The notes under the pieces are model-generated. The model saw only the letters and a program-made list of their open reading frames with translations. It was not told where the DNA came from and searched no databases. A DNA stretch of 63,632 nt, the filler included, from Octopus bimaculoides (taxonomy: Eukaryota), in assembly GCF_001194135.2 (NCBI RefSeq). It is 4 parts of 4 records of this genome, joined end to end, with 100 filler letters (N's around TTAATTAATTAA, not from the genome) between each part and the next. Parts side by side here need not be neighbours in the genome. Positions count along the whole stretch, not along the records: positions 39,939 to 61,279 come from NC_068997.1; 3 more parts are not named here. One strand, written 5' to 3'. A program made the position numbers and the translations under genes. Within the stretch, counting starts at the first letter, position 1, and the number at the start of each line of letters is the position of its first letter. Shown here in pieces: positions 39,939-61,182 of this stretch.

Positions 39939-40262
39939 TCTCTCTAAAGGAGACTACGGCAGCGGTACTGGAAATTAATAGTTATCGCCAAGCCAACATG
40001 GCAGTCCCAAAATTAGGACGAAAGCTGCCGTGAATTAGCTCCAAGCAGCCATCGCCTCTAGCTAGCTATGTGACACACGAAACCTGTGTCCTTTATAACC
40101 TTCGAACAGGGGAGGTCAGCAGCGTCCCCCTGCTGGTTTGGCATCTGCAGACTAGTTTCAGGGTGTTGCCCCTTGTCAATGCAGAGCAGCCAAGCCCTAG
40201 CCAGGCGGCGCTGCTGACTATCTGTTCGAAGGTTATTTATCTAATTTCAGTGGAATCTATCC
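39939..40262 (-). mobile_element. Hammerhead-bearing ~325-bp repeat (Penelope pLTR/retrozyme-like), copy 1
   Basis: Reverse-complement homologue of 49012-49338; internal inverted repeat ataaccttcgaacag...ctgttcgaaggttat encloses the ribozyme motif; left end abuts an N gap. Confidence 0.75.
40144..40185 (-). ncRNA. Minimal type I hammerhead ribozyme motif (U3-A8 variant core)
   Basis: UCUGCA-UUGACAA-GGGG caaca CCCU-GAAA-C ua G-UC-UGCAGA: 6-bp stem I, 4-bp stem II, GAAA, palindromic ACUAGU stem III, GUC cleavage triplet. Confidence 0.7.
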
Positions 40263-40508
40263 ACTGGTTTTCATATATATATATATATATGTCTGGATGT
40301 ATGTAAGTGTACGTATATATATACGCACAAATATACACATAGACATGCACACATACATATATGCGTGCATACAAACACACATATACACGTGCAGACATAC
40401 ATACATACGTACATACAGACATACATACAATCCTTATAATGTATTGCTGAACAGATTTACCCTACTATATCAAAGGATATAATGTTAGTTTAATATCACT
40501 TTATAAGA

Positions 40509-41423
40509 TTAATTTATTTCAGTTAACTCGTGCGAGGGATGACCGTTAGATTTTGTATATTTCCTTGAACATAAATTCCGAATACTTTGTCTTATAGTGG
40601 CATCGAAAAGCCACAGAAACGGTAAAAGCAGGAAGATGACAATATTTGTAACCCGATCAATGACAAAAAAATTAGCATGCATTAGTCCCACAAACCCAGC
40701 AACAATCATATTGTTTAGAAAGTATAAAATTACAGTCACTATTGTAATAATAATCAAAGTTATCACTTGTGATTTCATCATCTCTTGTTCTTTACTCTTG
40801 ATGGCAATGTAGATCAGGAAGCCTATAAAGACTAACATTGCAATCAACAACAGAATACTTATTACAAACTGAGCAACAATGGCACTGTTATAGTAGGAAA
40901 CATAGCAGCCATTTGAAGGTTGGTGTGAAAAAGCTAGAATGATTACCAAAGTTTTGATACTAATAAAGACCCACAAAATTCCTATCAATACGGATTGGAT
41001 AATTAGGAAAATTTGATTTTCGTATCTGCTTGGCCTAAAATACTTCACGATAAACTCGCAGCAAAGAGGTATAAGGAAATACTTATCACCTTCGTTAACC
41101 GTGTAAGCTAATATAACGATGAATAGGCAATGAGATTTTGGCAAATCTCGAACTATAAAGACATGCAAACTCTGGAAATAAGCAAACAAAGCAACGAGAG
41201 CATAGTTCAGAAAATAGTTCAGTAGTGACAAAGAGCGCGTTTTCCCATGAGATTTACGATCTAGGAAAACGGCGACTATTAGAAATATGTCGAACAGGAC
41301 AACTATGATAATCGATATACACATGAATATGTTCAACCGTCCAAAGGCATCATTTCGGAAAACTTCGTATTCGTATTCGTATTCGAAATGGTAATCGTAG
41401 CTCTGGTTAGTCGTCACTTCCAT
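40509..41423 (-). CDS. Divergent rhodopsin-like 7TM receptor, paralogue 1 (304 aa)
   Basis: Seven hydrophobic segments, Cys at the start of TM3 (HCL) plus ECL2 Cys, W4.50 (GILW), CEFIVKYFRP at the DRY/ICL2 position, LPFLW at NPxxY, helix-8-like TIRQSIRNL, NQS sequon. Start placed at ATG 41423 by alignment with paralogue 2; the ORF-track start 41471 is a TTG within a probable intron. Confidence 0.9.
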   Translation of the reverse strand: MEVTTNQSYDYHFEYEYEYEVFRNDAFGRLNIFMCISIIIVVLFDIFLIVAVFLDRKSHGKTRSLSLLNYFLNYALVALFAYFQSLHVFIVRDLPKSHCLFIVILAYTVNEGDKYFLIPLCCEFIVKYFRPSRYENQIFLIIQSVLIGILWVFISIKTLVIILAFSHQPSNGCYVSYYNSAIVAQFVISILLLIAMLVFIGFLIYIAIKSKEQEMMKSQVITLIIITIVTVILYFLNNMIVAGFVGLMHANFFVIDRVTNIVIFLLLPFLWLFDATIRQSIRNLCSRKYTKSNGHPSHELTEIN

Positions 41424-41456
41424 ATTGCTTTTTAGGTAGTTAAAATCGTCACAAGT

Positions 41457-41475
41457 CTGAAATGGAGACAATTAA
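41457..41475 (-). promoter_or_regulatory. Probable 3' splice acceptor of a 5'-UTR intron (paralogue 1)
   Basis: ttgtctccatttcag| lies 33 nt before the ATG, the same spacing as ttcctttactgtcttcatttcag| in paralogue 2 (47734). Confidence 0.65.
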
Positions 41476-42037
41476 AGCAATCAAGATACCAACCAGTTAA
41501 ATTCTATATCTTTATATACTTACAATGGTAATTGAATTATAATAATAATTATTTAATAAAATAAAACAATGAGAGATAGCAATTAGCAAGAATTAGTTAT
41601 AGACACATTTAATAAAGGTCTGTTCTTACTATAACTATGTGTGTGTGAGTCTAACTGCAAAACATACATTGTAGTCTCGTATAACCAAATTTTATTCTCG
41701 TTGAATCTGATATATCAGAAAAATGGATCAAAGAAATGAAAATAAAGTGAAAAGCCCCTCAGTTGAACACAGTTTATCTGCAACCCCCAAATTCTAGGAA
41801 AACAGAGCATAACATTGACTTTTATATTGTAGATTTCCTTGTCGGCTAGTCGAAGTAAACGACTTTTGGATGTAATGAACTAAAAGGGATAGAGACTGAT
41901 GAAATCTCTACGGCACAGTTTAGAGTCTCGCATGAAGAAATGTAAAATTTTTTGTGTCTCTGGCTTTCAGAAAGTTAGTTAACATAATACAGGTAGAACG
42001 AGGAAGTGCTTTGTTAAGCACAATTTACGAGGCAAAT

Positions 42038-42287
42038 TGTTATGTTTCCCTCGGGTGACTCGCAGAGATAACACAACGAGTTATACATTTATTGTTCAAT
42101 TACATACAAAGAACGCACTCACCCAATGTTCGTTATGAATAAACAAAAGTCATGTCCGCCATATATATATCAATGACCTTTTACTACGACAGTCCCACAA
42201 GACAACAACAATGAAACAATGAACTCAGACGAACCACATGACACACGGAACGTCAGACGAATTACATATCTAACAGTCCATATAACA
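42038..42287 (-). mobile_element. Solo LTR, 250 bp
   Basis: TGTTAT...ATAACA termini and an exact 5-bp target-site duplication CAAAT (42033-37, 42288-92). On the minus strand a TATATATA (~42162-69) precedes AATAAA (42088-93). Confidence 0.85.
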
Positions 42288-42578
42288 CAAATAATTTCAC
42301 CACATGCATATCTAAAACTTATCCAGACAAGGGGGTTGAACTTAAAAATAGAGGACTAAAAACCATCGCTACTTGAAAACAGGCAATGAACTGGTGCCAC
42401 CAGGAAATCTTTTGAACGGATTAAAAAGCTTTATACAAAAATTAATCCTTACGTGGATTACTGTTTTGTAAAAAAAAGTTGTATTGTTGGAGAAAGCATC
42501 AAACGTTTATACGTTGAAGAAAAAGACATGCAGCATAACGTTATCTTATAAAATTAATATTTAACCCCCCCTTCCTAC

Positions 42579-42622
<44 letters not shown>

Positions 42623-42949
42623 ACAAGGGGTAAGTCTGGTCCCAAAATATAGAATCTCTTACAGATAGAAGCTAAATAAATCGCCGCTCCCCTAATTAGC
42701 ATTGTGACCTTTAATAAGCGGTGTGTAATAAGTGACATGGATGTGACAAAATATTCTACAAAAAAGCTTATTTAGTCACTCCCCCAACAAGCCTGATTAT
42801 TCTTGTTATCTCAAATACTGGGTAATCAGTCTCCGAAGAACCGAATTGCGTATAGCTCACAAGGATATTCTAGATATTTAAATACACTTGATAAAATATC
42901 AAACATTATTTATAGAATAATGCTCCGTAACGTGAGCCTCAAGACTCCT

Positions 42950-43300
42950 CACAGGCGCCATCTCCAAAACATACAATATAACCCATAATTCTACTTACAA
43001 TGCCATAAACACAGAAACAAAGGAGCTAGCTACCCGCCTTAATACAGAGTATCGCATGGACTGGCTTGCTAGGCGACTCCCCTGCCCATATATTACCCTT
43101 AAGGACCGTAATCCCAAATGCAGGCTGATCAACCCCTCCAAAACGAAATAAGTACCGTTAGCAAGTGTTATGGGTTCAGTGGCCATCTGTCGTTCATCAA
43201 CACTGTATTTAAGACTCGACTACTACAAGATGATCTAGCTAAGATAATGAGCGAAATGTCATTTATGTACCCTGAAACCATGCTGTGTTACCTCTCAAAG
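42950..43300 (+). mobile_element. Penelope-like element RT N-terminal remnant
   Basis: INTETKELATRLN and YITLKDRNPKCRLINPSK..EISTVSK resemble the PLE motif FITLKDHK..NPKCRLINPSKSEIG.ISK. Confidence 0.6.
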
Positions 43301-43584
43301 TTTGCTTTCCTGCCATGTGATAACGATTACAAATAAAATAGTTATTTCCCCCTTTAAGAAAAAAAAATTAAATTGAAAATGTCGACACTTCAAAAAGTCG
43401 TCGGTAGCTACCGCTGTCCGCCCTTTTCTCTTTTTTCTTCCCTTAATCATTAATACAACTTTCGTGTCACGTAGACTGAAAGAAAGAAATTTATGAGATA
43501 TTTTTGGAATCACGGGTACTTGATATTTTTTCCTTAAAGGGGGAAAAATTACCATTTTATTCAAAATAAAATATTTATCTTATC

Positions 43585-44125
43585 TTAGTCAAGAGGCAGT
43601 AAAAACAGAAACCATTTCGAACAAATGAACCCTAGGACTTATCATTTTTGAAGCCTAGTACTTATTCTATCGGTAACTTTTGCCGGACTGATAAGTTACA
43701 GGGACGTAAACACACCACCACCGGTTGTCAAGCGGTGGTGGAGACAAACACAGGCACAGAGACACACACACATTGACATTGACATAAAAATACATATATA
43801 GCTTAGACAACTGAGGTTTCGGCCAGTATAGGCCCATGCCATGTCTAACATAGCACTACTTGGTGAAGTCTTTTAGTCATACGTGGGGCACCATGGCCCA
43901 TTCTAGCAAAGAGTTATTATTGTTGGAGACATTTTCGGATGTAGGAGGTTGGTCCGGGATTTTTTTGAGAAATTTGTCCAGAGAACTTTTGAATTTTATG
44001 GGATCAGTTTCCGTTTTGATGCGTCTACCAAATCCCCTCACAATGCTTTGGTCAGCCTGAAGCTACTGTCGAAGGTGCCACGCAGCGGGACCCAACCTGA
44101 ACCATGTGGTTGAGAAGTAACCCCT
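43585..44125 (-). mobile_element. CORE-like SINE interrupted by a 5'-truncated CR1 3' end (~43797-44020)
   Basis: SINE head 44021-44125 and tail 43585-43770; the insert translates IKTETDPIKFKSSLDKFLKKIPDQPP...NSLLEW (CR1 C-terminus). Confidence 0.75.
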
Positions 44126-44242
44126 CGATATAAAGTATGGGGGATTACATATGATGGAAAAAAAGAAAAAAACGTATATACGGTATACATTAAGAGAAGG
44201 GAAGTATACATAGTATACGGCATCAGAAGAAGAAGAAGAAGA

Positions 44243-44301
<59 letters not shown>

Positions 44302-44580
44302 AAGAAGAAGAAGTAGTAGAAGAAGAAGAAGAAGAAGAAGAAGAAGAAGAAGAAGAAGAAGAAGAAGAAGAAGAAGAAGAAGAGAGTGAGGTGCTGTCCT
44401 CGAGAGAATTTATGAAAAAGTAGGTGAAAATTAGGAAAATGACAAGAGTGGAACCATTCTCAGTGTAGATCTTTGAGTCGGAAGAAAGAAGCTGGAGAGG
44501 ATACTCGTCCTTGGTATCCAGGGTGATCATGGATGGTAGGGTTCCACGATTATCGCTGGAGGTCCTCCTGCATCAGAAGG
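44125..44580. mobile_element. L1/Tx1 3' fragment with internal inversion and microsatellite expansion
   Basis: 44389-44580 (+) matches 15073-15270; 44388-44125 (-) matches ~15281-15400, with (TTC)n(CTA)n expanded in its pyrimidine tract. Confidence 0.75.
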
Positions 44581-46794
44581 AAACCTATCCTGATTTGGTG
44601 TGAATTAATAATCGAATTTCTTGGGAAGACCTTTGTCGTCTTACATTTCATTTCCACTAAATATATCTATTTCCATGCCTTTAAGCTTTATTCTAATTCA
44701 CCTATCGCTCCATATCTCTCCACTATTAGTTTTCTGCTAATTTCTTTCTTTCTCCTTCTCTTTCTATAAACCACCTTGACGTTGTATCTACGAACGGTTT
44801 TTTAAGAAAAACTTGCTTGCATTCCCTTCATCATATACGCAGTCATCACATTCCGTTAAAATGCCTTATTGATGTGTTTGGTTTCTTTCTTTCCCTGATA
44901 AGAAGATTGCATTGTTTTACACCATTTTATTCCTTCTGGAATAATACCAATGTTTTCTTCAAAACATATGTCGGAAGTAAAAGGATTTGAATAACACCTG
45001 TGTTTCACTCTATTCATTTATTTATTCATTTATTTATTTATTTATTTATTTATTTATAATATACAAAAAAAATTAATCTAAACCTGGAGTTTCTACCTTT
45101 ATAAGTAGGCTGTTACATCCTTGGTACTTGCGTGAATTTTTGCTACACTGGTAACTATTTATTTATCTTTTCCGTGTAATTTGTAAACATTGAAAAAACA
45201 CTCATACATACATACATACATACATACATACATACATACATANNNNNNNNNNNNNNNNNNNNNNNNNNNNATATATATATATATATATATATACATATAT
45301 ATTTATATACATGCATATATGGTACATATATGAAATTAAAATTCAATTCATGGAGAAACATTTTCCTTAATAGGGATGGAAATCATCCAATTTTTCCCTG
45401 GTATGGCAATATGACAGAGATTTAAAACGCTTTCACAACTTTAATGGGCATATATTCAATATACAAAAATTAAAAGAAAACGGAGAGTTACGACTGACAT
45501 ATTTTAATTTATTAACATATTTTTGTTACTATTATAATATAATATAACATGAATACGAATATTAATCCTACATATTGTTTCGATTCAGACCCAATAATGA
45601 ATTTATAAAAAATCCGTGTTTATGGGTAAAAATCTCATTTGACAAAATTTGACAAAAATTTCATATGTGCGATGTTAGATCCTAGAATCGACTGAATTAA
45701 ACTTGCTTATGTTTATAAGCAAGAGCGTCGATAATTTATATAGCTAACAAAAATTAAAAAAAACATTTTTAGATATATAATAAAAATATATAATAAAAAT
45801 CAAAAATCAAAATAAATAAATAAAATAAATAAAAATAATATAATGGTTGTAAAATATGATAAGAATATTAATCTAAATATATTCCTGCGCATTATTTTTT
45901 TTATCTAAAAAAGAACCTAAATAATATGCTAAGAATTTATGGCGAAGTAGGAAATATCTTCCATACTATTAGGAAAAATGCATGTTATTCATACAGTATA
46001 TTCTGAAAAATTCGTTAATCTCAAAAAAAACAACGTGTTATTAATCATGGCTAAATAGCAAAAAAAACCCAAAACAATTAAAGTACTTCATTACCAATAG
46101 GTTAACACTAAATGATATTATAAATTACACTATATTCATTATTTATAATCACCTGTAGTAGAAATGCAATCAAAATTTAAAATTACGTAGTTTTATTAAG
46201 AAATCATAAATACATATTATATAATAACATTATTATAATATAATTGTATACATTTTCTAAAGTCATTAAAAACTTTTAATCAACTATTTATTCATTCAAA
46301 AATTTTTTATTCTAAATACGGCGATATTAATTTTATAAACTTATGATTATTTATTACCTATACTAACTTGTACATAAAGAAATAAATGAATTATCAACAA
46401 TATATAGGTGTATGTGTGTGCGTTTTAATAATTAAGCCAGAGAAATTATAAAAACGAATAACGCAGCTCAATAGCTTGTATATTTACTTGCTATATACAT
46501 GTATGCGTATCATATGGCCATCATACATGTAACGAATGACTAACTATAGGTAGTCCTATAATTCTAATGCCTATAAGTTCCATTTACGTGCAGCTTTATA
46601 TATATATATATATATATGTATTGGAAAGCCTTTGTGAACAATTGGCTAATACAGGTTTTAAGTATAAAAGGGAGCTTTTAAAAAGTATTAGTTTTTAAAA
46701 AATGTTATAAATCTTTTATCAGGATGTTACTAACCATTGTTAGAAGACGTTTTTTTTCCTAGATACAATGCTATTTTCACATCGCTTTATAAGA

Positions 46795-47700
46795 TTAATT
46801 TATTTCAGTTAACTCGTGAGAGGGATGATCTTTATGCTTTTTACATTTCTCTGAGCATAATTTCCGAATACTTTGTCTTATAGTGAAATCAAAAGACCAC
46901 AGAAACGGCAAAAGCAGGAAGCTGCCAAGACTCATGACTCGATACATGACGAATAAAGGAGAACGGTAATGCCCCATAAACCCAGCATCGTTAAGAGTGG
47001 TTAAAATTAACAAAATTATAGTCACTGCAGTAATAATAATCAAAGTTATCAATGGTGATTTCATCATCTCTTGTTCTTTACTCTTGATAGCAATGTAGAT
47101 CAACAGGCCTATAAACACTAACATTGCAATCAACAACAGAATACTTATCACAAATTGAGCAACAATGGCATTAATATATAAGTAAAAAAAGCAACTATTA
47201 GTAGAAAGGTTGGAAAAAGCTAGTATGAGTACCAAATTTTTGATACAAATAAGGACCCACAAAATCCCTATCAATACGGATTGGATAATTAGGAAAATTT
47301 GATTTTCATATTTGCTTGGCCTAAAATATTTCATAATAAAGTCGCAGCAAAGTGGGATAAGGAAATACTTATCACCATCGTTAACCACAAAAGCTAATAT
47401 GGTGATAAATAAGCAGTGAGATTTTGGCAAGTCTCGAACTATAAAGACATGCAAACTCTGAAAATAAACAAACAAAGCAACGAGAGCATAGTTCAGCAAA
47501 TAGTTCAGTAGTGACAAAGAGCGTGTTTTCCCGTGAGACTTGCGATCTAGGAAAATGGCAACCATTAGAAATACGTTGAACAGGATAACTATGATAATAG
47601 ATATACAGATGAATATATTCAACCGTCCAACTGCATCATTTCCGAAGACTGAAACTTTGTAGTCGTAATCGTAGCTGTAATTAGCTGACATATTTTCCAT
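46795..47700 (-). CDS. Divergent rhodopsin-like 7TM receptor, paralogue 2 (301 aa)
   Basis: Intact ORF, colinear with paralogue 1 over 284 aa (217 identical by hand count); N1.50 (LFNVF), C3.25, CDFIMKYFRP, W4.50, ECL2 Cys, LPFLW; NMS/NYS sequons. Confidence 0.92.
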   Translation of the reverse strand: MENMSANYSYDYDYKVSVFGNDAVGRLNIFICISIIIVILFNVFLMVAIFLDRKSHGKTRSLSLLNYLLNYALVALFVYFQSLHVFIVRDLPKSHCLFITILAFVVNDGDKYFLIPLCCDFIMKYFRPSKYENQIFLIIQSVLIGILWVLICIKNLVLILAFSNLSTNSCFFYLYINAIVAQFVISILLLIAMLVFIGLLIYIAIKSKEQEMMKSPLITLIIITAVTIILLILTTLNDAGFMGHYRSPLFVMYRVMSLGSFLLLPFLWSFDFTIRQSIRKLCSEKCKKHKDHPSHELTEIN

Positions 47701-47733
47701 ATTATCTTTTGGGTAGTTAAAATTGTCTCAAGC

Positions 47734-47756
47734 CTGAAATGAAGACAGTAAAGGAA
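47734..47756 (-). promoter_or_regulatory. Probable 3' splice acceptor of a 5'-UTR intron (paralogue 2)
   Basis: Polypyrimidine tract + CAG, 33 nt upstream of the ATG, conserved with paralogue 1. Confidence 0.65.
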
Positions 47757-48134
47757 ATGAAGAAATCTGAAATGAAGAAAAATTTCATTATATAATTGTA
47801 ATGGTAATTGAATTATTAGAAAAATTATTTAATAGAGTAAAACATTGGGAGTCATTCATTAATAATAATTAGTTATAGATGCGTTAAAGTAAAATCTGTT
47901 GTTGCATTATGTGCGTGTGAAACTAATCACAAATTTGTTATTATGGCTTCATTTCTATAAAGGGTTGAAACCATTCCACAAAACATACATTGTAAATAAT
48001 CTTAGGAAACGCATGAATGTCAAAACATAACATTGACCACATCTATAAAGTATAATGGTATGTGGCTTAGGCGTAGAAAACGAAAATCTGCATTGAGGAA
48101 ATAGTGTTGTAAACGTGGTTAAGAAGATGAAATG

Positions 48135-48569: not shown

Positions 48570-48579
48570 NNNNNNNNNN

Positions 48580-48619
<40 letters not shown>

Positions 48620-48913: not shown

Positions 48914-49009
48914 AACAATTAAGGTTACAAATATAAGTTGCCGAAACAATTAAGGTTACAAATATAAGTTGCCGAAACAATTAAGGTTACAAATATAAGT
49001 TGCCGAAAC
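48914..49009. repeat. 3 x 31-bp perfect tandem repeat
   Basis: aacaattaaggttacaaatataagttgccga starts at 48914, 48945 and 48976, directly abutting the hammerhead-bearing element. Confidence 0.95.
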
Positions 49010-49011
49010 CC

Positions 49012-49338
49012 AACAGATGTATTCCACTGAATATAAGTAAATAAACCTTCGAACAGACGGTCAGTAGCGATGCCTGCTGGGTTTCGGCTACTCTACATTA
49101 ATAAGGAGTAAATACCCCGAAACTAGTCTGTGGATGCCAAACCAGCAAGGAGAAGCTGCTGACCTCCCCTGTTCGAAGGTTATAATGAACACAGGTTTGT
49201 GTGTCACATAGCTAGCTAGAGGCGATGGCCTCTTGGAGCTAATCAACGGTAGCATTCGTCCTATTTTCCTGGACTGCCATGTTATCTTGGTGATAACTAT
49301 TAATATCCAGTACCGCTGCCGTAGTCTCCTTTAGAGAG
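49012..49338 (+). mobile_element. Hammerhead-bearing ~325-bp repeat, copy 2
   Basis: Homologue of 39939-40262 in the opposite orientation; ends gtagtctcctttagagag. Confidence 0.75.
49092..49134 (+). ncRNA. Degenerate type I hammerhead motif (G5A, probably inactive)
   Basis: UCUACA-UUAAUAA-GGAGU aaau ACCCC-GAAA-C ua G-UC-UGUGGA; stem I kept with different pairs (incl. U-G); U3/A8 shared with copy 1. Confidence 0.55.
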
Positions 49339-49361
49339 ATTTAGAAATATTAATATTTCGA

Positions 49362-49392
<31 letters not shown>

Positions 49393-50519
49393 GAGTAAAA
49401 ATAAATACAAAAAAGGTGGGGGTTTTTGTATGATTGTGTATAGAGGAATATATTATTTTGTTTAAAAGAGTTCCAACACTGTCTGTTTTTTATGTTTTAT
49501 TTATATTNNNNNNNNNNNNNNNNNNNNNNNNNNNNNNNNNNNNNNNNNNNNNNNNNNNNNNNNNNNNNNNNNNNNNNNNNNNNNNNNNNNNNNNNNNNNN
49601 NNNNNNNNNNNNNNNNNNNNNNNNNNNNNNNNNNNNNNNNNNNNNNNNNNNNNNNNNNNNNNNNNNNNNNNNNNNNNNNNNNNNNNNNNNNNNNNNNNNN
49701 NNNNNNNNNNNNNNNNNNNNNNNNNNNNNNNNNNNNNNNNNNNNNNNNNNNNNNNNNNNNNNNNNNNNNNNNNNNNNNNNNNNNNNNNNNNNNNNNNNNN
49801 NNNNNNNNNNNNNNNNNNNNNNNNNNNNNNNNNNNNNNNNNNNNNNNNNNNNNNNNNNNNNNNNNNNNNNNNNNNNNNNNNNNNNNNNNNNNNNNNNNNN
49901 NNNNNNNNNNNNNNNNNNNNNNNNNNNNNNNNNNNNNNNNNNNNNNNNNNNNNNNNNNNNNNNNNNNNNNNNNNNNNNNNNNNNNNNNNNNNNNNNNNNN
50001 NNNNNNNNNNNNNNNNNNNNNNNNNNNNNNNNNNNNNNNNNNNNNNNNNNNNNNNNNNNNNNNNNNNNNNNNNNNNNNNNNNNNNNNNNNNNNNNNNNNN
50101 NNNNNNNNNNNNATTTTTGATACACACAGAACAAAAAACAGTAGAGAAGAGTAAAAAAACCACCTGCCTTTAGTTAATTTAGTTAGTACGATCGTTTCAC
50201 AGTTAAGAGTAAAGAATACTCTATTCTGATCTTCAGCTAAATATTCTAATAAATTTGTTAATGTCTAAATAACTCACGTTAATTTTGACCATGCGACATC
50301 AATACCACGTGAGGAAGACGTTAAGAAATTTATCGGCCAGTGAGTTCAAAATCTCTCACCCTAATGAATTCAATTCAGTGTGCATCACAAATAGTCCCGC
50401 ATAGAAAAGAGACCCGTACGAACTTCTTGCGGTTTAACTATTCACCTTAGAGGTATTATTAAAATATAGATATGCAGGGCAGGGAATCGTCAATAAATAG
50501 AATAAAGAAACTAAGTAAA

Positions 50520-51369: not shown

Positions 51370-52440
51370 TAGGGTGCCAACGGTATTCAAGGACATAGAT
51401 TTTTTGTCATTATTTTATTTGACTAATTTTTATTGAACTTCTATTTCAGAAAATAATAATGACATGCCCTAGGCTTACTAATGAAATGAAAGGGCATTCT
51501 GTAATTGTGGCTTTGAAGGCTAAGCATGATAATTTTGAAATTTTTCGTTTTCTGAAAGTTGCAAGATCTTTTGTCCACAAGATTCAGTGTAAGTTAGACA
51601 AAGAAGATAGAAGCGTATTACCTGTATCAAAACGTAAAAAAGCATTCCAAATGCTCTGATTCTATCAAGACATCGGAATTTATTCAGGAAGTAAAGCAAA
51701 ACATTGAAGACTACCCAGAAAAGTCAATGAGGTCAATTGCAAAAGAATTTCGTGTCAGAAAACACAATAAAAAATGTTGTGCAGGAAGACATCAGATACA
51801 AATTTTATGTGATGAGAAGTCAATTCATGTGAAAGAAAAAAAAAACAAAACCTTTTACTCAAATCTAAAAGACTTTTGAACAAACTTAAAAGTCCATCAG
51901 AGGATGGTATCATTTAGTTTTTCTCAGACGAGAAAAACTTTGACTAGGACCAGAAAACTAACAGAAGAAATGACAGATGACTATGTGCAGGCCCTTCTGA
52001 GGTTCCAAGAGTAATGCACACAAAATTTCTTGCAAGTGTCATGGTTTTGGGTGTTGTAAGCAATGAAAGACATGTGATGCCTCCTCACTTTTTCCCACAA
52101 GGCCTTAGGGTGAATGCTGCTGCATATATTGAGGTTATAATTAAAGTTGTTAAGCCTTTATCCAACAGTGTATGCAGTGGAAGGCCTTATGTATTTCAAC
52201 AAGATTCTGCTCCTTTACACAAGGCTCAAACGACGCAAGAATGGATGGCCGACCATTTGCATGATCACAACACTCCCAACATTTGGCCTCCTAATTCTCC
52301 AGATCTCAATCCACTGGACTATTATGTATAGGGCATTGTTGAAAAAATATGTCATTGAACGCCCCCAGAGCACCATAGATTTTTGAAAGCTGCCATATTT
52401 CGAGTCATGTCCGATATGAACAAGTATCACTTGCGTGACT
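51370..52440 (+). mobile_element. DD37D (maT/Bmmar1-like) transposase remnant
   Basis: KFLASVMVLGVVS, GLRVNAAAYIEV, FQQDSAPLHKAQTTQEW, WPPNSPDLNPLDYYV; left TIR-like tagggtgccaac; frameshifts. Confidence 0.85.
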
Positions 52441-53172
52441 GAAGAAATCAACTGAGTAACAAACATTTATATCGGCTCTTATTATATACAGATTAAACTT
52501 TAGCAAATTGTAGATGCATCATGTCACCGTATGAGTTTTCTCCCCTGTAATAACAGGGCAGTGGTAGAGGAAATGACTCTAGAGAAGCTGCAATGTGTTA
52601 AAGGTTAATAAGAAGCAGTGTTTTAGCAGAAATAATGGAGTGTGCTCGATTCGATCTCTATTCACTTGTACCGCTAGTAATACCGAGGCAAAAAATTGAA
52701 TAATCACAGCAACAGTCATTTCAACTGACGACAACAGTCTTCTGAATTTGTTGCCTCGAAAAGAGAGAAAATAATTATTCCGTATTTGAATTCTTACTGG
52801 TGGTTACCTCACAGGAATCATTTTAAACATTTGTTAGATGCAAGCCTAATCAATTTCAGTTTTGGGTTGTATATATAATTAGAGAATGAATGTAATAATT
52901 AGCTGAAATAGGGCTGTTTACAAAAGTTAAATATCACATTGTCAAACAAAGGAGAACAATAATTAATTACAGTTAGAAGAAAGGAATCACGGTAAAAAAT
53001 AATGACGGTCAAATTTCTCTGGGTGGATTCAGTTATGACAAAAATCGGCAATTATAAGGCTGGTATACTGGAGCGGGAGGAAACTACATGCATGCATACA
53101 TACATACGTACGTACATACATACATACATACATACATACATACATACATACATAGGTATATACATACATAAA

Positions 53173-54037
53173 CAAGGTGTTAGGGCAAAATTTGACAGTT
53201 TGCACAAAAGGAAAGGAAAACACAATATTTAATCAAAAATCAAAGTATTAAAAAAATCAAAAAACATTTCAATTAAATTATGGCTGAGAAATAACAATCT
53301 ACTCAAAGTGGCAGCCCTCAGCTCCCACCATGGTCTCATAACGGCTCCATAACCTGGCGCATGTGTTCTCTGTATCTCTGGGAAGATCTTTGAACACCGC
53401 CTTGATCTTGGCCACCAGCTCGGCGTTGGTGGTGCAGGTAGAGTATTTAATATCTTTCTCAATCGCAGCCCACACAGTAATCCTAAAAATTACTATCGGG
53501 GAATAAGGGGATCAGAAATCGGGGATTGGTGAAGTAGTACAAATTCTCCGATAATCACTTCTGATTCTTTCCGGAAGCATGTCAAGAAGCCGAATGCAGC
53601 TGTCACACATATGGCCTCCAGCAGCAATCCTCTCCAGCCAGGAATTGACCACAAACACCAGCTACTTTACATAAGCGTATGAACTGAGCCTAAGGCCCTG
53701 TTCAAAGATGTTAAGGTAAACTCCCGCGTGTGGAAGCAGTCAAAACTCATACAGTGCTCCTTCCTGTTGATCACGGCTTCGTAATCTCTATTGCAGCTGT
53801 TCAGATCACACCTTCGCAGTGTTTACCGGCATTTTGATATCCAGTATCAATCATCATGATACAGGTAACTCTTTTCCTCTATTGAGATGACTTCCATTCT
53901 TGCATGTCCGCTAACTTTTTCTCAACTACAACGCTAATCTGTATGCTCTCTAATGCCGTTGACTGCTTCCCAATACATCAAGCTGTTCCTAAAGAGAAGG
54001 AGACATATGAATCGTCAAGTTTAGCCAGAACGTTCTG
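53173..54037 (-). mobile_element. Internally deleted DD37D mariner-like element
   Basis: Minus strand FEQGLRLSSYAYVK...WLERIAAGG and VWAAIEKDIKYSTCTTNAELVAKIKAVF; degenerate TIRs caaggtgttagggcaaaatttgac / cagaacgttctggctaaacttgac. Confidence 0.7.
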
Positions 54038-54059
54038 TATGTACATATATATGTATATA

Positions 54060-54942
54060 CGCGGTTTGATCAATAAGTATCCGGACTGTTGCCATAGTAA
54101 CGAAGCTAAAGCACGCAGAGTAGAGCCGCCTGGCACAGATTGATCCTGGACTCTGCTGTGCATGCGCACTAAGTTTTAATGTTGTAACTCACTACCGTTG
54201 TTTACATCAGTGCTTAGAAGGAAGGTTTGTAGCGTGTGATTGTTGCATTGACCATGAATCTGCATCAAATTTTGTCAAAAGCTTGGCGATATCTGTTCAG
54301 AAGCCTACGCAAGGTTGCAGCAAGTGTATGGAGAGGAGTGTATGAACCGAAAAAATATCGATAGTGACGAACGTTCAGAGAGACCCGCAACCAACGGAAC
54401 GGAGAAAAGCGTCGCAGATATGCGTGCAGCTGTGAGGGGAAATTATCGAGTCACCAACTGCGAGTTATCAGAGGATGTGCAGATTAGTTACGGTTTGGTT
54501 CAGTCCATTATCACTGAAGATTTGAGTATCAAACGCGTGTCTGCCTAGTTTGTGCTAAAACTGCTTTCAGCTTGCAACGCACCTGCCCATTCACCGCAGT
54601 TTATGCAGCAGTTTTTGGCTAGGCACAGCATTCCCCAGGTCCGACAACCACAATATCCCCCAGATCTTGTCTCTTGCGACTTTTACGTCTTTCCAAAAAT
54701 CAAATCCTGCTTGAAAGGAAGAAGATTTCAGGACGTTGAGGAAACCAAAGGAAATGCGACGATGCAGTTGCTGATTAACCCAGAAAACGAGTTCCAGGAA
54801 GGCTTCCATCAAAGGAAACAGCGCTGGTTTACGTGTGTGGTTTCTGAAGGGGACTACTTTCAAGAAGATTAAATGCCAAATTGGTGCGTGTTGTAATTTT
54901 GTTTTTATAGCACCAATCTGGATACTTAGTGATCAAACGTCC
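54060..54942 (+). mobile_element. Internally deleted DD34D mariner
   Basis: TIRs cgcggtttgatcaataagtatccgga / ggacgtttgatcactaagtatccaga with TA flanks; QQVYGEECM, QPQYPPDLVSCDFYVFPKIKSCLKGRRF (YSPDLAPxD-like). Confidence 0.88.
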
Positions 54943-57109
54943 TATATTTGTATATATTTACATACATATATGTACATATATGCACTGATTGATATTATTT
55001 GGAATGTGAAGTTGTATTAAAATGGAGGAACACTCAGTACTGTTTAGTAAAGTACATATTTATTAGAAATGCTATATTATTAGCATTATCCTGCGTTTGA
55101 GAATTTTAAAAAAATCACTTCTTTATCTTTCTAAGACATCTCAACGCTTCTAAAGCAAACTTCGTTTGTTTGTTTACCTTCATCGTAATTTGAATTTAAC
55201 ATATTTATTAATTTTTACATGGAAAAGGTTGAGAGTCACTTCGAAATTTTGGCTTACCAAACGGCACCACTGTTTTTTCTGGCTTTTATATAGTTTTTGA
55301 CTAACCACCCTTTAAATTAACGTATGAGTATCTGTTTTATTTTTATTATCGACGCGACGTTCCCTGAGTGGCCTGACATTAACTAAGCAACAGAGAACTC
55401 TGTTGATAGACAATTATATGAAAATGCATCCCAGCATATAAATGTATATAATGTATAAATATATTATTTGAAGTGTAGCATTCCCGTTATTTGTTTATAG
55501 AAACACGGTTGAAGAGGAATGGTATGGCAGTGACTGAGTGGCATTTGCATGAGCCAAGCCAGTTCCAAGAAGCAAAGACTATTATAACATTTCATATATC
55601 TTTCTATTCTTCGTATAATGTATAGACTTTACTACTGTTGATCAGGGTTTATCCTGTTTCTAGTCGCTGCTACTTACACTTCGGTGCTATACCCTACATT
55701 TTACTTCTAATATTTAATATTTCTTTCTGTCATGTCTTACTACATGTTGGTCGAAATGGCGTGCATTCATTTCTCAATGATATTAACAGAGTTATCAATA
55801 TCATTTCAACTTATTTTGGTTATTGTCTTGCTATGAACACCTAGTTCTTTGTCAGCAAATATCTTTCTGCTGCTATAAAGTGTATTAAAAAAAGATATAT
55901 ACATACAACGTATAAGAGCTTTAGAAAGAAAAAAAAAACTGTACCAAATTTCTATCGATATACACCGTTGTTTTTTCAAAACATTTTGTAAATAATGAAA
56001 AATTTAGTTACATAATTTTGCCTTAATTTAGTTGGTATTTGGACCTAAATAAACATGAAATTTTGATGAAAGGTTTTATGTTAGTCAGCATTAATCATTT
56101 AGAAACACGAAAACATTTAATCTTTCTAAAATGTTTAGTTTTGCAAAACGGTTTACCTACGCATCCCCCCACTAGAATTCACTTCGAGTTTTATAGCAAA
56201 TACATGATTTGTTCCACTAAAAATATAAATGAAAAGAGTTACATAATTTATATATATANNNNNNNNNNNNNNNNNNNNNNNNNNNNNNNNNNNNNNNNNN
56301 NNNNNNNATATATATACATATATACCCTAGCGGTTTTTGCAAATTCACTGGAAGGTAAAACTTCCCCCTCTATCCTCACTTTCCTCTCCAAGTGGACACC
56401 TTCCTCATTCTATTTAAACCCATCCACCACACATCTTTCACCATAGCCACTAGACAAAAAGACACTGCCTGCTCTGTCTCGTTGTCTTATAGTTGAGTGG
56501 TGGTGTGATCCTCACAATAGGTTCAGCTGATAGTCGGATTCATCCTACACGTGATAGCAGCTGTTCACCATGACTGCACAAGGGAGAAATGCTAGAATAT
56601 TGCATGAGTGCGTGTAGTATGGTTTCGTTGCACTGCGCGCATTTCGGACAGTCTCACCCGGTGCTGCTTCCATACCTGTAGGGTTTATCTCGAATCGACA
56701 GTGATTCTCGGTAGCACTGATAGGTCAGTGATTTCTAGAAGTTATCCATGGTAGTTCCGAACACGAAAGTCTTCCGAAACAGACCAGCAAGTGCATCCTC
56801 CTCGAAACCCAGGGTTTTCCCGAGAACCTCATCGTACTTACCAACCACTAGACTTCAATATATTGCTAATATAGATGTACAATGGGTGCATTGATCGACC
56901 GGTAGACGGCGGTTTAGCGCCTGACGGTATTCCAGTCACCAGGCGTCCAATCTTGATTATTTCGTGACTCAGGATTGCATGTCCGTCAACGAGATGAACT
57001 GCGGAAAGGTGTACCTTACGAATGAACCATACTGGCTCACCGTCCAGGAAAATCTGTCAGTTGTGTAGCTACAGTGCATGTCTGCGCATCAGCAGCGATG
57101 ACAACAACA

Positions 57110-60574: not shown

Positions 60575-61182
60575 GTATACAATATCGTGAGATTGTTGAT
60601 TGAAGATATTGTGTCTACTGGGGGATGTCAAGTCACAAGGAGCTCAGACAAACAGTACTTTACGCAGTATGCGTACAGTTCCAAGTAATGTCGACTTTTG
60701 CAATCCATCTAGATTGCAGAGTATTTCTAAGGCTCCAAGAAATTTTTTTCAGATTGAGTGGTATTGAATCCAATTCTCCGATGACAGTAGGGATAACCTT
60801 TATGTTTGACTCTCGTAGCTGCCACATCTTAGCGATCTCAATTCTCAGGTCTTTATATTTATCGACTTGTTCTCTTTCTTTCATGATGATATGTTGATCT
60901 TTTGGCACTGCCACATCCATTATTAGGCACTCTTGTTTGTCCCTCCTAAAGGTTACTATATCCGGCCTTCGGTGCTCTAACACCTTGTCTGTCAAGAAGT
61001 CAGAGTCCCAGAGGATTTTTGCCTTCCTCTTTTTGTCCATTACCTTTTCCAGTGTATGTTGGTATCAAGCACTCCTAAACTCGTATCCATAGTTACGGCA
61101 CAGTAGCCAGTGGAGGTTTTGGGCTACCTTGTGTCTACGCTTGTACTCTTTCTGCGCAAGACTTTCACAAGCACTAACAAAT
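60575..61182 (-). mobile_element. R4/Dong-type LINE 3' remnant between (TAA)n tracts
   Basis: VSACESLAQKEYKRRH, KILWDSDFLTDKVLEHRRPDIV, LIMDVAVPKDQ, DKYKDLRIEIAKMW, IPTVIG; (TTA)n at 60508-60562 and 61183-61205. Confidence 0.88.

What the first reader, a model, noticed from the sequence alone, without database searches (positions are those of the whole stretch)
40509..47700. Tandem pair of highly divergent 7TM receptors, a candidate lineage-specific chemosensory or ligand-scanning GPCR family
Seen: two intact ORFs (304 and 301 aa) on the same strand, ~5.4 kb apart, with 217/284 identical aligned residues, seven hydrophobic segments, the TM3-ECL2 cysteine pair and W4.50. Known: single-coding-exon tandem arrays of divergent class A GPCRs are the usual architecture of animal chemoreceptor families. 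Inference: this is part of an expanded, poorly annotated cephalopod family; I cannot assign it to a named receptor.
Basis: partly seen in the sequence, partly recalled or inferred. Interest (0 to 1): 0.75.

Follow-up and report, generated by a model that had tools for sequence, protein, structure and literature searches.

The report
Octopus-only orphan receptor gene pair
Two neighbouring intact octopus genes encode small membrane receptors with the fold of ordinary G-protein-coupled receptors but without their usual activation residues; they belong to a small family so far named only from octopods, and neither its ligand nor its tissue of expression is known.

Summary
Two intact same-strand ORFs (301 aa, 46795-47700; 304 aa, 40509-41423) are 74% identical. 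The N-gap (45243-45270) lies in an intergenic microsatellite, touches no reading frame, and its flanks are colinear with Octopus sinensis.

The window is Octopus bimaculoides chromosome CM046617.1. The pair is two-thirds of a three-gene array. O. sinensis has at least six genes in about 50 kb, and Argonauta hians has three in 14 kb.

No member matches Pfam 7tm_1. A family profile hits only class A GPCRs in PDB (E 0.005). An AlphaFold model (pLDDT 77.5) matches 579 PDB chains, and the top 50 are all class A GPCRs (TM up to 0.77).

The Cys3.25-ECL2 pair, W4.50 and P7.50 are kept. Across all 21 members 2.50 is never Asp, 3.50 never Arg, TM6 has no CWxP, and NPxxY reads LPxxW.

The cytoplasmic loops are nearly frozen, while the outward half changes about three times faster.

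Each copy has a conserved splice acceptor 33 nt before its ATG. A transcript-like contig from a distant member uses the equivalent site.

Fold and lineage restriction are supported. "Expanded" is modest and "chemosensory" is untested. Only 7 true relatives exist among 1.84 billion representative proteins.

The parts
46795..47700 (-). Gene A coding sequence (301 aa plus stop; protein P0001). It is a single coding exon and the orthologue of O. sinensis XP_036366295 (88% aa identity).
47701..47733 (-). Gene A: the 33-nt 5' UTR part of the coding exon, between the acceptor CAG and the ATG. It contains an in-frame TGA, so no upstream exon can extend the protein.
47734..47747 (-). Gene A: conserved 3' splice acceptor TGTCTTCATTTCAG (pyrimidine tract plus CAG).
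   Evidence: The equivalent site is used in transcript-like contig L008.
47782..47794 (-). Gene A: conserved TATA-like element TATATAATGAAAT, about 35 nt upstream of the acceptor tract. Its role is undecided: intron 3' region, or a core promoter.
46762..47926 (-). Paralogous block A. This is the only stretch alignable to copy B (81% nt): CDS plus about 226 nt upstream and 33 nt downstream.
40509..41423 (-). Gene B coding sequence (304 aa plus stop; protein P0003). It is a single coding exon and the orthologue of O. sinensis LOC118766725 (P0005, 76% aa identity).
41424..41456 (-). Gene B: the 33-nt 5' UTR part of the coding exon.
41457..41470 (-). Gene B: conserved 3' splice acceptor TGTCTCCATTTCAG.
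41506..41518 (-). Gene B: conserved TATA-like element TATATAAAGATAT.
40476..41654 (-). Paralogous block B, the counterpart of 46762-47926.
45243..45270 (.). Assembly gap inside an intergenic microsatellite, (CATA)n on one side and (AT)n on the other. It is not part of either gene, and its flanks are colinear with O. sinensis.

Best explanation
The two ORFs are genes A and B of a same-strand tandem array on Octopus bimaculoides chromosome CM046617.1. Gene C lies about 15 kb further on, outside the piece. The array encodes an orphan family of about 300-aa seven-helix receptors that is so far named only from octopods.

Gene structure. Each gene has non-coding leader exon(s) spliced to a conserved acceptor 33 nt before the ATG, followed by one terminal exon that holds the whole coding sequence.

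Protein (structure predicted, function inferred):
- The N-terminus faces out.
- The N-terminal tail is short, acidic and tyrosine-rich, with N-glycosylation sequons.
- A TM3-ECL2 disulfide is expected, with a beta-hairpin ECL2.
- ICL3 is very short, helix 8 is present, and the C-terminal end H-E-L-T is conserved.

Most likely mechanism (inferred). The paralogues recognise different extracellular ligands through the fast-changing outward half: N-tail, ECL2, outer TM6, ECL3 and outer TM7. All of them report to the same intracellular partner through an almost invariant cytoplasmic face:
- ICL1, DRKSHGKTR, with D52-R53 invariant in 21/21
- ICL2, KYFxPSKYE
- ICL3, KxKExEMMKS
- helix 8, DxTIRQSIRK

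The canonical class A switches are replaced in every member: 2.50 is Asn, 3.50 is Phe or another hydrophobic residue, there is no CWxP, and NPxxY reads LPxxW. Activation and coupling must therefore differ from textbook class A receptors. The partner could be a G protein engaged non-canonically, an arrestin-like protein, or something else; this is not known. The acidic Tyr-rich tail and hairpin ECL2 favour a peptide or protein ligand over a small amine. Whether the ligand is environmental or endogenous is open.
For: Real, maintained genes:
- Five ORFs (A, B and C in O. bimaculoides; A and B in O. sinensis) are intact at dS 0.08-0.34.
- The probability of escaping a stop codon under neutral substitution alone is 0.05, 0.003 and 0.00025 for the three divergence levels.
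- A-versus-B dN/dS is 0.45, Fisher p = 2e-5.
- Thirteen columns are invariant across 18 members that go down to 26% identity.

GPCR fold:
- The family profile hits only class A GPCRs in PDB: 12 of 12 hits at E <= 10, HCAR2 best at E 0.005.
- The register is correct. C96 aligns to C3.25, D120 to D3.49, P128 to P3.57 and C170 to the ECL2 Cys. N42 aligns to N1.50, N70 to D2.50, and LPFLW to NPFIY of A2A.
- Spacings are canonical: 1.50 to 2.50 is 28, 3.25 to 3.49 is 24, 3.50 to 4.50 is 27.
- AlphaFold2 with 18 sequences gives pLDDT 77.5 and pTM 0.76.
- Foldseek gives 579 PDB hits at E <= 1e-3. The top 50 are all class A GPCRs, with TM 0.57-0.77 over about 263-299 alignment columns.

Topology: K+R count is 17 inside against 5 outside.

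Motif replacement across the family.

Outward-versus-inward asymmetry:
- Non-synonymous differences are about 3-fold enriched in the extracellular half (p = 9e-4, 1e-5 and 2e-7).
- Pooled pN/pS is 1.08 for ECL2, 1.89 for TM6 and 1.19 for ECL3, against 0.15 for ICL1, 0.25 for ICL2 and 0.29 for ICL3.

Arrays: O. bimaculoides has 3 genes, O. sinensis at least 6, and Argonauta 3 in one 14-kb array.

Splice acceptor:
- It is invariant in 9/9 Octopus copies and occurs only twice in the window, against 0 expected.
- It is also present in L004, L007, L009, L010 and in front of the two near-identical copies in L013.
- It is used. L008 and L009 are 100% identical over 1,560 nt starting exactly after L009's CAG, and L008 carries an unrelated 219-nt leader with no ATG.
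Against: - There is no expression, ligand or coupling evidence for the two window genes themselves.
- The only transcript evidence is one Logan contig from an unidentified species, encoding a member about 25% identical to gene A.
- Orthologue dN/dS (0.76 and 0.79) is not significantly below 1 taken pair by pair (p = 0.4 and 0.28).
- Synonymous differences are also about 2-fold higher in the outward half. This is not significant, but part of the asymmetry could reflect mutation-rate heterogeneity or gene conversion of the inward half.
- Nothing shows dN/dS significantly above 1, so diversifying selection is not demonstrated.
- The structure is a prediction from a shallow alignment. The first attempt, with 10 sequences, reached only pLDDT 49.
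- The TM5 and TM6 register rests on one weak profile alignment.
- Loss of R3.50, N7.49 and Y7.53 could mean the proteins do not signal at all.
Confidence: 0.6

Rival explanations
1. External chemoreceptors. The array encodes contact or distance chemosensory GPCRs expressed in suckers, the olfactory organ or skin, and each paralogue is tuned to different environmental molecules.
For: - The genes form a tandem same-strand array with a single coding exon behind a non-coding leader, and the family is lineage-restricted.
- dN/dS is high and change concentrates on the ligand-facing half.
- This is the architecture reported for lophotrochozoan chemosensory class A lineage-specific expansions (PMC11886862).
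- A cys-loop receptor gene lies about 6 kb beyond gene C. Octopus chemotactile receptors belong to that superfamily, but I could not show that this neighbour is one.
Against: - Copy number is small for a chemoreceptor repertoire: 3 to about 7 per genome.
- The A and B orthologue pairs are retained one-to-one between O. bimaculoides and O. sinensis, unlike rapid birth-and-death families.
- No tissue expression data were reachable.
- The lophotrochozoan lineage-specific expansions described in PMC11886862 keep DRY and NPxxY. This family does not.
- The sulfotyrosine-like acidic tail is more typical of protein or peptide receptors (my own knowledge of chemokine and complement receptors).
Confidence: 0.25
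2. Receptors for an endogenous octopod peptide or protein signal (neuropeptide, reproductive or immune cytokine-like factor) that co-evolves with its receptors.
For: - The N-terminal tail is acidic and Tyr-rich in most members: net negative in all 21, with Y next to D/E in most.
- ECL2 is predicted as a beta-hairpin, as in peptide and protein class A receptors.
- One-to-one A and B orthologues are retained across Octopus species, and the family persists to Argonauta.
- The small copy number is stable.
Against: - No candidate ligand is known.
- The high dN/dS is unusual for neuropeptide receptors.
- No canonical G-protein switch residues are present.
- There is no expression evidence.
Confidence: 0.3
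3. Atypical, non-G-protein 7TM proteins. They would act as a decoy or scavenger, an arrestin-biased receptor, or an accessory or trafficking subunit for another receptor, rather than as a ligand-activated G-protein switch.
For: - R3.50 is absent in 0/21, Asp2.50 in 0/21, N7.49 in 0/21 and Y7.53 in 0/21. There is no W6.48 or P6.50.
- ICL3 is only about 10 residues.
- The cytoplasmic face is highly conserved but non-canonical, with an invariant D52-R53 and a conserved C-terminal HELT motif.
- Altered DRY motifs are the hallmark of atypical chemokine receptors (my own knowledge). ACKR3 topped the fold search run with the low-confidence model.
Against: - Motif loss does not prove loss of coupling. 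Other divergent chemoreceptor families signal without these motifs (my own knowledge).
- Strong conservation of the whole cytoplasmic face fits a specific transducer equally well.
- The ACKR3 match came from a poor model and is not specific.
Confidence: 0.15
4. Decaying duplicates, or chance ORFs in AT-rich DNA, with no function.
For: Orthologue dN/dS of 0.76-0.79 is not significantly below 1. I could not see any annotation name for the two window proteins, because the tools withhold source names for window-encoded proteins.
Against: - All copies are intact.
- ORF survival under neutrality has probability 0.05 down to 0.00025 per comparison.
- Structural residues are invariant down to 26% identity.
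- The splice acceptor is conserved.
- Substitutions are distributed non-randomly.
- The family persists from Octopus to Argonauta.
Confidence: 0.03

Closest known systems
Class A (rhodopsin-like) GPCRs, Pfam PF00001 / PROSITE PS50262. The best structural matches are adenosine A2A, beta1/beta2-adrenergic, D2 and CCR5. The best sequence-profile match is HCAR2.
   Same: - Seven-helix fold plus helix 8, with TM-scores of 0.57-0.77 over the whole domain.
- Cys3.25-Cys45.50 pair, W4.50, P7.50, an acidic 3.49, P3.57, and N at 1.50 in 12/21.
- Canonical inter-motif spacings.
- UniProt names paralogue C 'G-protein coupled receptors family 1 profile domain-containing protein'.
   Different: - No member reaches Pfam 7tm_1 even at E <= 1.
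- 2.50 is Asn/Thr/Ser, 3.50 is Phe/Leu/Ile/Tyr/Val, 3.51 is an invariant Ile.
- TM6 has no CWxP.
- NPxxY is replaced by [LVMIS]-P-x-x-W.
- There is an invariant D-R at the TM1/ICL1 boundary and a conserved E/D3.37-G-x-K3.40 cluster in the TM3 core.
- There is no specific subfamily affinity.
Lineage-specific expansions of class A GPCRs in Lophotrochozoa (Nath et al. 2025, PMC11886862), and the cephalopod GPCR expansion groups 1-4 (Ritschard et al. 2019, PMC6408891).
   Same: - Tandemly arranged and taxon-restricted.
- No one-to-one orthologues outside the clade.
- The extracellular halves of the helices are more variable than the rest.
   Different: - Ritschard et al. collected GPCRs by Pfam PF00001, and the annotated paralogue A0A0L8HQ02 is absent from their tables. 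The family was therefore not in that survey.
- The expansions described by Nath et al. retain DRY and NPxxY.
- This family is much smaller than the listed expansions (21-63 genes).
- Whether Nath et al. captured it cannot be checked here, because no supplements are held.
Atypical chemokine receptors (ACKR1-4) and other class A receptors with altered DRY motifs.
   Same: - A class A fold with a non-canonical 3.49-3.51 motif.
- An acidic, tyrosine-rich N-terminal tail and a disulfide-stapled hairpin ECL2.
- This is a resemblance partly from my own knowledge. ACKR3 and CCR5 appear among the fold matches.
   Different: - No detectable sequence relationship beyond the generic class A signal.
- ACKRs keep D2.50 and NPxxY (my own knowledge), whereas this family has lost both.
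- No chemokine-like ligands are known in cephalopods.
Vertebrate odorant-receptor gene structure: non-coding leader exon(s) spliced to a single coding exon, with genes in tandem arrays.
   Same: - Leader plus single coding exon, shown by the L008/L009 splice junction and the conserved acceptor.
- Same-strand tandem arrays.
   Different: - Copy number is lower by orders of magnitude.
- The two families are unrelated in sequence.
- Vertebrate odorant receptors keep the DRY-like (MAYDRY) and NPxxY motifs (my own knowledge).

Membership tests
Class A rhodopsin-like GPCR (Pfam PF00001, 7tm_1) | Significant match to the PF00001 profile (gathering threshold) | tested here: not met
   Neither window protein has a 7tm_1 hit at E <= 10. 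None of 18 family members has one at E <= 1, and P0022 has none either.
Class A rhodopsin-like GPCR (Pfam PF00001, 7tm_1) | Seven-transmembrane helix bundle with class A arrangement plus amphipathic helix 8, N-terminus outside | tested here: met
   By prediction only. The AlphaFold2 model has pLDDT 77.5 and pTM 0.76. Foldseek gives 579 PDB hits at E <= 1e-3; the top 50 are all class A GPCRs, with TM up to 0.77. K+R count is 17 inside against 5 outside.
Class A rhodopsin-like GPCR (Pfam PF00001, 7tm_1) | Remote sequence homology to solved class A receptors | tested here: met
   The family profile against PDB gives 12/12 hits that are class A GPCRs, with HCAR2 at E 0.005 and TM3-TM7 in register. 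This is weak but specific. The single sequence reaches only E 6 to A2A.
Class A rhodopsin-like GPCR (Pfam PF00001, 7tm_1) | Cys3.25-Cys45.50 (TM3-ECL2) disulfide pair | tested here: met
   C96 and C170 are invariant in 21/21. They align to the corresponding Cys of HCAR2. Bond formation itself was not tested.
Class A rhodopsin-like GPCR (Pfam PF00001, 7tm_1) | W4.50 | tested here: met
   W148 is present in 19/21 and lies 27 residues after position 3.50.
Class A rhodopsin-like GPCR (Pfam PF00001, 7tm_1) | E/DRY motif with Arg3.50 | tested here: not met
   3.49 is D (17) or E (4). 3.50 is F16/L2/I1/Y1/V1, with Arg in 0/21. 3.51 is Ile in 21/21.
Class A rhodopsin-like GPCR (Pfam PF00001, 7tm_1) | Asp2.50 (sodium / activation site) | tested here: not met
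   Position 70 aligns to D52 of A2A and lies 28 residues after N1.50. It is N18/T2/S1, with Asp in 0/21.
Class A rhodopsin-like GPCR (Pfam PF00001, 7tm_1) | CWxP in TM6 (W6.48, P6.50) | tested here: not met
   The columns aligned to HCAR2 6.48 and 6.50 hold no Trp and no Pro in any member. The register rests on one weak alignment, but TM6 (residues 216-239) of gene A has no Trp at all and its only Pro (P216) is at the cytoplasmic end, not at 6.50 (read directly from the sequence).
Class A rhodopsin-like GPCR (Pfam PF00001, 7tm_1) | NPxxY in TM7 | tested here: not met
   7.49 is L15/V3/M/I/S, with Asn in 0/21. 7.50 is Pro in 18/21. 7.53 is Trp in 20/21, with Tyr in 0/21. The register comes from the A2A alignment.
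Class A rhodopsin-like GPCR (Pfam PF00001, 7tm_1) | Ligand-dependent activation of heterotrimeric G proteins | not testable with these tools
   This needs heterologous expression and signalling assays.
Opsins | Retinal-binding Lys7.43 | tested here: not met
   Position 258 (P7.50 minus 7) is L/M/I/F/V/T, with Lys in 0/21.
Animal chemosensory GPCR repertoire (functional category) | Tandem arrays of single-coding-exon genes restricted to one lineage | tested here: met
Animal chemosensory GPCR repertoire (functional category) | Large, rapidly turning-over repertoire (tens to hundreds of genes, pseudogenes, few one-to-one orthologues) | tested here: not met
   I found 3 genes in O. bimaculoides and at least 6 in O. 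sinensis. There are no pseudogene fragments in the piece. A and B have one-to-one orthologues between the two Octopus species.
Animal chemosensory GPCR repertoire (functional category) | Expression in chemosensory cells and response to environmental chemicals | not testable with these tools
   No RNA-seq for O. bimaculoides could be queried. No paper mentions the gene identifiers.

The most novel reading that the evidence does not exclude
The array may work as one or a few transcription units in which a shared non-coding leader exon is spliced to one of several alternative terminal exons, each holding a complete receptor coding sequence. Receptor choice would then be made by promoter or splice selection rather than by independent genes. 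The receptors themselves would form a motif-less class A branch that signals through its invariant, non-canonical cytoplasmic face (D52-R53, KYFxPSKYE, HELT tail) to a partner other than a conventionally engaged G protein.

Hints:
- Paralogue homology covers only the acceptor, the CDS and about 230 nt upstream. No duplicated leader is visible.
- All copies lie on one strand.
- NCBI models two separate O. sinensis coding exons, D and E, 7 kb apart, as isoforms X1 and X2 of one gene, LOC115220941.
Probability: 0.12. Interest if true: 0.7.

Novelty: new variant of a known kind. Interest (0 to 1): 0.42.

Why it matters
Octopus chemosensation is currently explained mainly by cys-loop 'chemotactile' receptors, and cephalopods are reported to have reduced lineage-specific class A GPCR repertoires (PMC11886862).

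A conserved family named only from octopods, with the class A fold but none of the canonical activation switches, escapes Pfam-based surveys; it is absent from the tables of Ritschard et al. 2019. It is a concrete, small and tractable set of orphan receptors to test in sensory, immune or reproductive tissues.

It is also a natural experiment in how far the class A scaffold can drift while the cytoplasmic face stays under strong constraint. R3.50, D2.50, CWxP and the N and Y of NPxxY are all replaced.

If the shared-leader reading is right, it would be an unusual way to diversify receptor expression.

If expression turns out to be weak or ordinary, this is simply one more orphan invertebrate GPCR clade.

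Tried and rejected
1. Single-sequence searches gave only noise. Pfam returned TgpA_N and FixQ below threshold, and PDB phmmer returned A2A at E 6.
2. The first AlphaFold run, with 10 close sequences, gave pLDDT 49. Its Foldseek matches were all class A GPCRs but weak (TM <= 0.45). I used them only as a hint and replaced them with the 18-sequence model.
3. Word-indexed profile searches added almost nothing. The A2 profile found nothing new, and the most divergent member P0017 found only P0022.
4. P0018, the weakest exhaustive-search hit, is a 58-aa tandem-repeat artefact with no family features. I rejected it as a member.
5. I first placed 2.50 at L76 by eye. The A2A alignment and the 28-residue spacing from N1.50 put it at N70.
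6. I tried to reach O. bimaculoides DNA beyond the piece, to see whether orthologues of O. sinensis genes D-G exist, through the ORF at 60660-61040. It is not on record. By colinearity, a D orthologue would lie at about window 62 kb, just outside the piece. This stays unresolved.
7. The species behind the Logan and ENA members could not be identified.
8. The L008 leader exon could not be located in the genomic contig of its relative, L004.
9. Literature searches for the gene identifiers found nothing. No supplements are held for PMC11886862.
10. An opsin reading is rejected because there is no Lys7.43.
11. A haplotig or assembly-duplicate reading is rejected. The copies are 81% identical in DNA and the pair is conserved in O. 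sinensis.
12. The 155-aa ORF at 44063-44530 is an (AGA)53 microsatellite, not a gene.

Full report
**1. What is in the sequence**

The piece 39939-61279 holds two intact minus-strand ORFs. Gene A is 46795-47700 (301 aa). Gene B is 40509-41423 (304 aa from its first ATG). The 320-aa version starts at a bacterial-style TTG and is irrelevant for a eukaryote. BLASTP gives 222/299 identities (74%), no gaps, E 6e-137. tblastn with all family members finds no further copy or pseudogene fragment in the piece.

The assembly gap was tested first.
- The Ns at 45243-45270 lie between a (CATA)10 run and an (AT)n run.
- They sit 1.5 kb downstream of A's stop and 3.8 kb upstream of B's ATG, so no reading frame crosses them.
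- Both flanks align colinearly to the orthologous O. sinensis intergenic region, with 68 nt between the blocks here against 60 nt there.
- The gap is therefore short and the flanks are continuous. The quoted 5.4-kb spacing (5,371 nt) is only slightly uncertain.

**2. Where it comes from and how large the family is**

Exact look-ups place both proteins on Octopus bimaculoides chromosome CM046617.1 of GCA_001194135.2 (window coordinate = record coordinate minus 190,700).

O. bimaculoides:
- A third paralogue, C (P0004, XP_052830115 / A0A0L8HQ02, 68% identical), lies about 15 kb beyond B on the same strand, outside the piece.

O. sinensis:
- At least six members lie on one strand within about 50 kb, in the order G, F, E, D, A, B.
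- The A-B pair therefore predates the split of the two species. Orthologue identities are 88% for A and 76% for B.

Argonauta hians:
- Three members lie on one strand within 14 kb of one contig. Two of them are 97% identical.
- Two further members lie on another contig.

An exhaustive phmmer search of 1.84 billion representative proteins found only 8 hits at E <= 1e-3. One of them (P0018) is a tandem-repeat artefact. Every member that carries a species name is an octopod. The others come from unnamed sequencing runs.

The region upstream of gene A is colinear with O. sinensis. By that register, an orthologue of gene D would lie just beyond the end of the piece. I could not fetch that DNA.

**3. 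Are they GPCRs?**

By sequence the signal is faint.
- None of 18 members scanned hits Pfam 7tm_1 even at E <= 1, and P0022 has no Pfam hit.
- A profile of 18 members hits only class A GPCRs in PDB (12 of 12). HCAR2 is best at E 0.005, aligned from TM3 to TM7.
- In that alignment C96 falls on C3.25, D120 on D3.49, P128 on P3.57 and C170 on the ECL2 cysteine.
- The weak A2A alignment puts N42 on N1.50, N70 on D2.50 and L264-P265-x-x-W268 on N-P-x-x-Y.
- The spacings are canonical: 28, 24 and 27 residues.

Structure prediction depended on alignment depth.
- With 10 close sequences the model reached pLDDT 49.
- With 18 diverse sequences it reached pLDDT 77.5 and pTM 0.76.
- The better model shows seven helices, a beta-hairpin ECL2 (163-174) and helix 8.
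- Foldseek with that model gives 579 PDB matches at E <= 1e-3. The top 50 are all class A GPCRs, led by A2A, beta1/beta2-adrenergic, CCR5 and D2, with TM-scores of 0.57-0.77 over about 263-299 alignment columns.
- The positive-inside count is 17 against 5.

The class A fold is well supported as a prediction. No particular subfamily is indicated.

**4. What is unusual**

Across 21 members:

| Position | Residues found | Canonical residue |
|---|---|---|
| 2.50 | N18 / T2 / S1 | Asp, 0/21 |
| 3.49 | D17 / E4 | acidic, kept |
| 3.50 | F16 / L2 / I / Y / V | Arg, 0/21 |
| 3.51 | Ile 21/21 | Tyr |
| 6.48 and 6.50 | no Trp, no Pro | CWxP absent |
| 7.49 | L15 / V3 / M / I / S | Asn, 0/21 |
| 7.50 | Pro 18/21 | Pro, kept |
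| 7.53 | Trp 20/21 | Tyr, 0/21 |

Retained class A features are C3.25 and C45.50 (21/21), W4.50 (19/21) and N1.50 (12/21).

Family-specific invariants are:
- D52-R53 at the TM1/ICL1 boundary (21/21)
- Y71, Y79-F80, C118 and S277
- an E/D108-G109-x-K111 cluster in the middle of TM3
- the C-terminal H-E-L-T motif

The N-terminal tail is net acidic in all members and rich in Tyr flanked by Asp or Glu in most of them, with one or two N-x-S/T sequons. There is no Lys7.43, so these are not opsins.

**5. Selection**

Pairwise Nei-Gojobori dN/dS is 0.45 for A against B. It is 0.76 and 0.79 for the A and B orthologue pairs, and 0.62-0.76 for the other pairs. Only the paralogue comparison is significantly below 1 (p = 2e-5). 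The orthologue pairs are not (p = 0.4 and 0.28).

Function is still supported.
- The chance of keeping an open frame under neutral substitution is 0.05, 0.003 and 0.00025 at the three divergence levels.
- All copies in three species are intact.
- The substitution pattern is strongly structured. Non-synonymous differences are about 3-fold enriched in the outward-facing half (p = 9e-4 to 2e-7).
- Pooled pN/pS is at least 1 in ECL2, TM6 and ECL3, against 0.15-0.29 in ICL1, ECL1, ICL2 and ICL3.

Caveats:
- The pooled pairs are not independent.
- Synonymous differences are also about 2-fold higher in the outward half (not significant).
- Nothing shows dN/dS significantly above 1.

I read this as relaxed-to-diversifying evolution of the ligand-facing side on a frozen cytoplasmic side. 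It is not proven positive selection.

**6. Gene structure**

Aligning 320 nt upstream of nine Octopus copies shows an invariant T-x-T-C-T-(C)-C-A-T-T-T-C-A-G about 35-40 nt before each ATG. In the window it is at 47734-47747 and 41457-41470. These are the only two matches, against none expected. The motif has the form of a 3' splice acceptor.

Direct support comes from a distant member.
- Contigs L008 and L009 encode the identical protein P0022.
- They are 100% identical over 1,560 nt starting exactly after the CAG of L009's TTTTTTTTATTACAG.
- Upstream of that point L008 carries an unrelated 219-nt sequence with 47% GC and no ATG.
- L008 is therefore best read as a spliced transcript: a non-coding leader joined to one long terminal coding exon.

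Acceptors are also present in front of the ATG in L004, L007, L010 and the two near-identical Argonauta copies. In gene A the 33 nt between the CAG and the ATG contain an in-frame TGA, so the ATG is the true start.

A TATA-like element, TATATAA[AT]GA, about 35 nt upstream of the acceptor tract is conserved in 7 of 9 copies. Whether it belongs to the intron or to an alternative proximal promoter is open.

Homology between paralogues A and B covers only 1.18 kb: about 226 nt upstream, the CDS, and 33 nt downstream. No duplicated leader exon is visible. NCBI models the separate O. sinensis coding exons D and E as isoforms of one gene. Together these hint at shared leader exons. This is a hypothesis only.

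**7. Mechanism**

Shown here:
- intact, conserved, arrayed genes
- a predicted class A fold
- replaced switch motifs
- the outward/inward asymmetry in substitutions
- a conserved acceptor that is used in a relative

Inferred:
- The paralogues bind different extracellular ligands and share one intracellular partner.
- Activation is non-canonical.
- The acidic Tyr-rich tail and the hairpin ECL2 favour a peptide or protein ligand.

Not known: the ligand, the tissue and the transducer. The chemosensory reading remains possible, at about 0.25, but rests on architecture alone.

**8. Relation to the literature**

Ritschard et al. 2019 gathered cephalopod GPCRs through Pfam PF00001. The annotated paralogue A0A0L8HQ02 is not in their tables, so this family was outside that survey.

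Nath et al. 2025 used more sensitive searches on 19 cephalopod genomes. They report few, tandemly arranged lineage-specific class A genes that keep DRY and NPxxY. Whether they captured this family cannot be checked here. No paper in the library mentions the gene identifiers.

**9. Verdict**

This is a small, octopod-named, motif-less branch of the class A fold. It is a new variant of a known kind, of moderate interest until expression and ligands are known.

Noticed in passing
L001 16629-20918 (O. bimaculoides CM046617.1, about 205.5-209.8 kb; outside the window piece): A gene with Neur_chan_LBD and Neur_chan_memb domains (cys-loop receptor, 563 aa) lies about 6 kb beyond paralogue C on the opposite strand. 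Octopus chemotactile receptors belong to this superfamily. The stretch is gap-rich and I could not read its coding sequence.
   Followed up: partly
L006 2882-3796 and 10001-10903 (O. sinensis CM016875.1): NCBI annotates two separate complete coding exons 7 kb apart, E (P0007) and D (P0006), 66% identical, as isoforms X1 and X2 of one gene, LOC115220941. That implies shared upstream exon(s). Paralogue C in O. bimaculoides also carries isoform labels.
   Followed up: partly
window 39939-40272 and 49005-49339: A 337-bp inverted repeat pair (84.6% identical) brackets the A-B gene pair. One copy lies about 1.3 kb upstream of A and the other just downstream of B. These are probably two copies of a short interspersed element.
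   Followed up: no
window 52014-52331 (+) and 52433-55842: An ORF with a DDE_3 transposase domain (Tc1/mariner-like, E 1e-7) sits just below a 3.4-kb stretch (52433-55842) that is 90-92% identical and colinear with the O. sinensis intergenic region. If the ORF belongs to the same old block, the insertion would predate the species split.
   Followed up: partly
window 44225-44383: An (AGA)53 microsatellite creates a spurious 155-aa Ser/Thr-rich ORF (44063-44530, minus strand). It is not a gene.
   Followed up: yes
window 47782-47794 and 41506-41518 (- strand): A TATA-like element, TATATAA[AT]GA, is conserved in 7 of 9 Octopus copies about 35 nt upstream of the splice-acceptor tract. It could be part of the intron's 3' end or a proximal core promoter, which would allow unspliced transcripts.
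   Followed up: partly
window 48101-47701 versus 46621-45309; 42037-40272 versus 43608-42288: Divergence from O. sinensis is about twice as high around gene B as around gene A. For B, dS is 0.164 and the intergenic identity about 80%. For A, dS is 0.079, the intergenic identity about 89%, and the 400 nt upstream of A are 95% identical. The cause is unexplained: regional rate variation, gene conversion or paralogy are all possible.
   Followed up: no
L013 2791-3819 (Argonauta hians BAAFZT010000203.1): A third, 342-aa array member is 60% identical to P0015. It has a long poly-Glu C-terminal tail and reads N-R-D-L-E-S-Y-R-K where the other members have L-D-R-K-S-H-G-K. An Abi (Abl-interactor) gene lies next to the array.
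   Followed up: no
window 48570-48590, 49505-50100, 56260-56310, 59560-60290 (approximate): Several further N-gaps in the piece are all embedded in AT- or CA-type microsatellites. The O. bimaculoides assembly is gap-rich here, so absence of further family copies upstream of gene A is not proof of absence.
   Followed up: no
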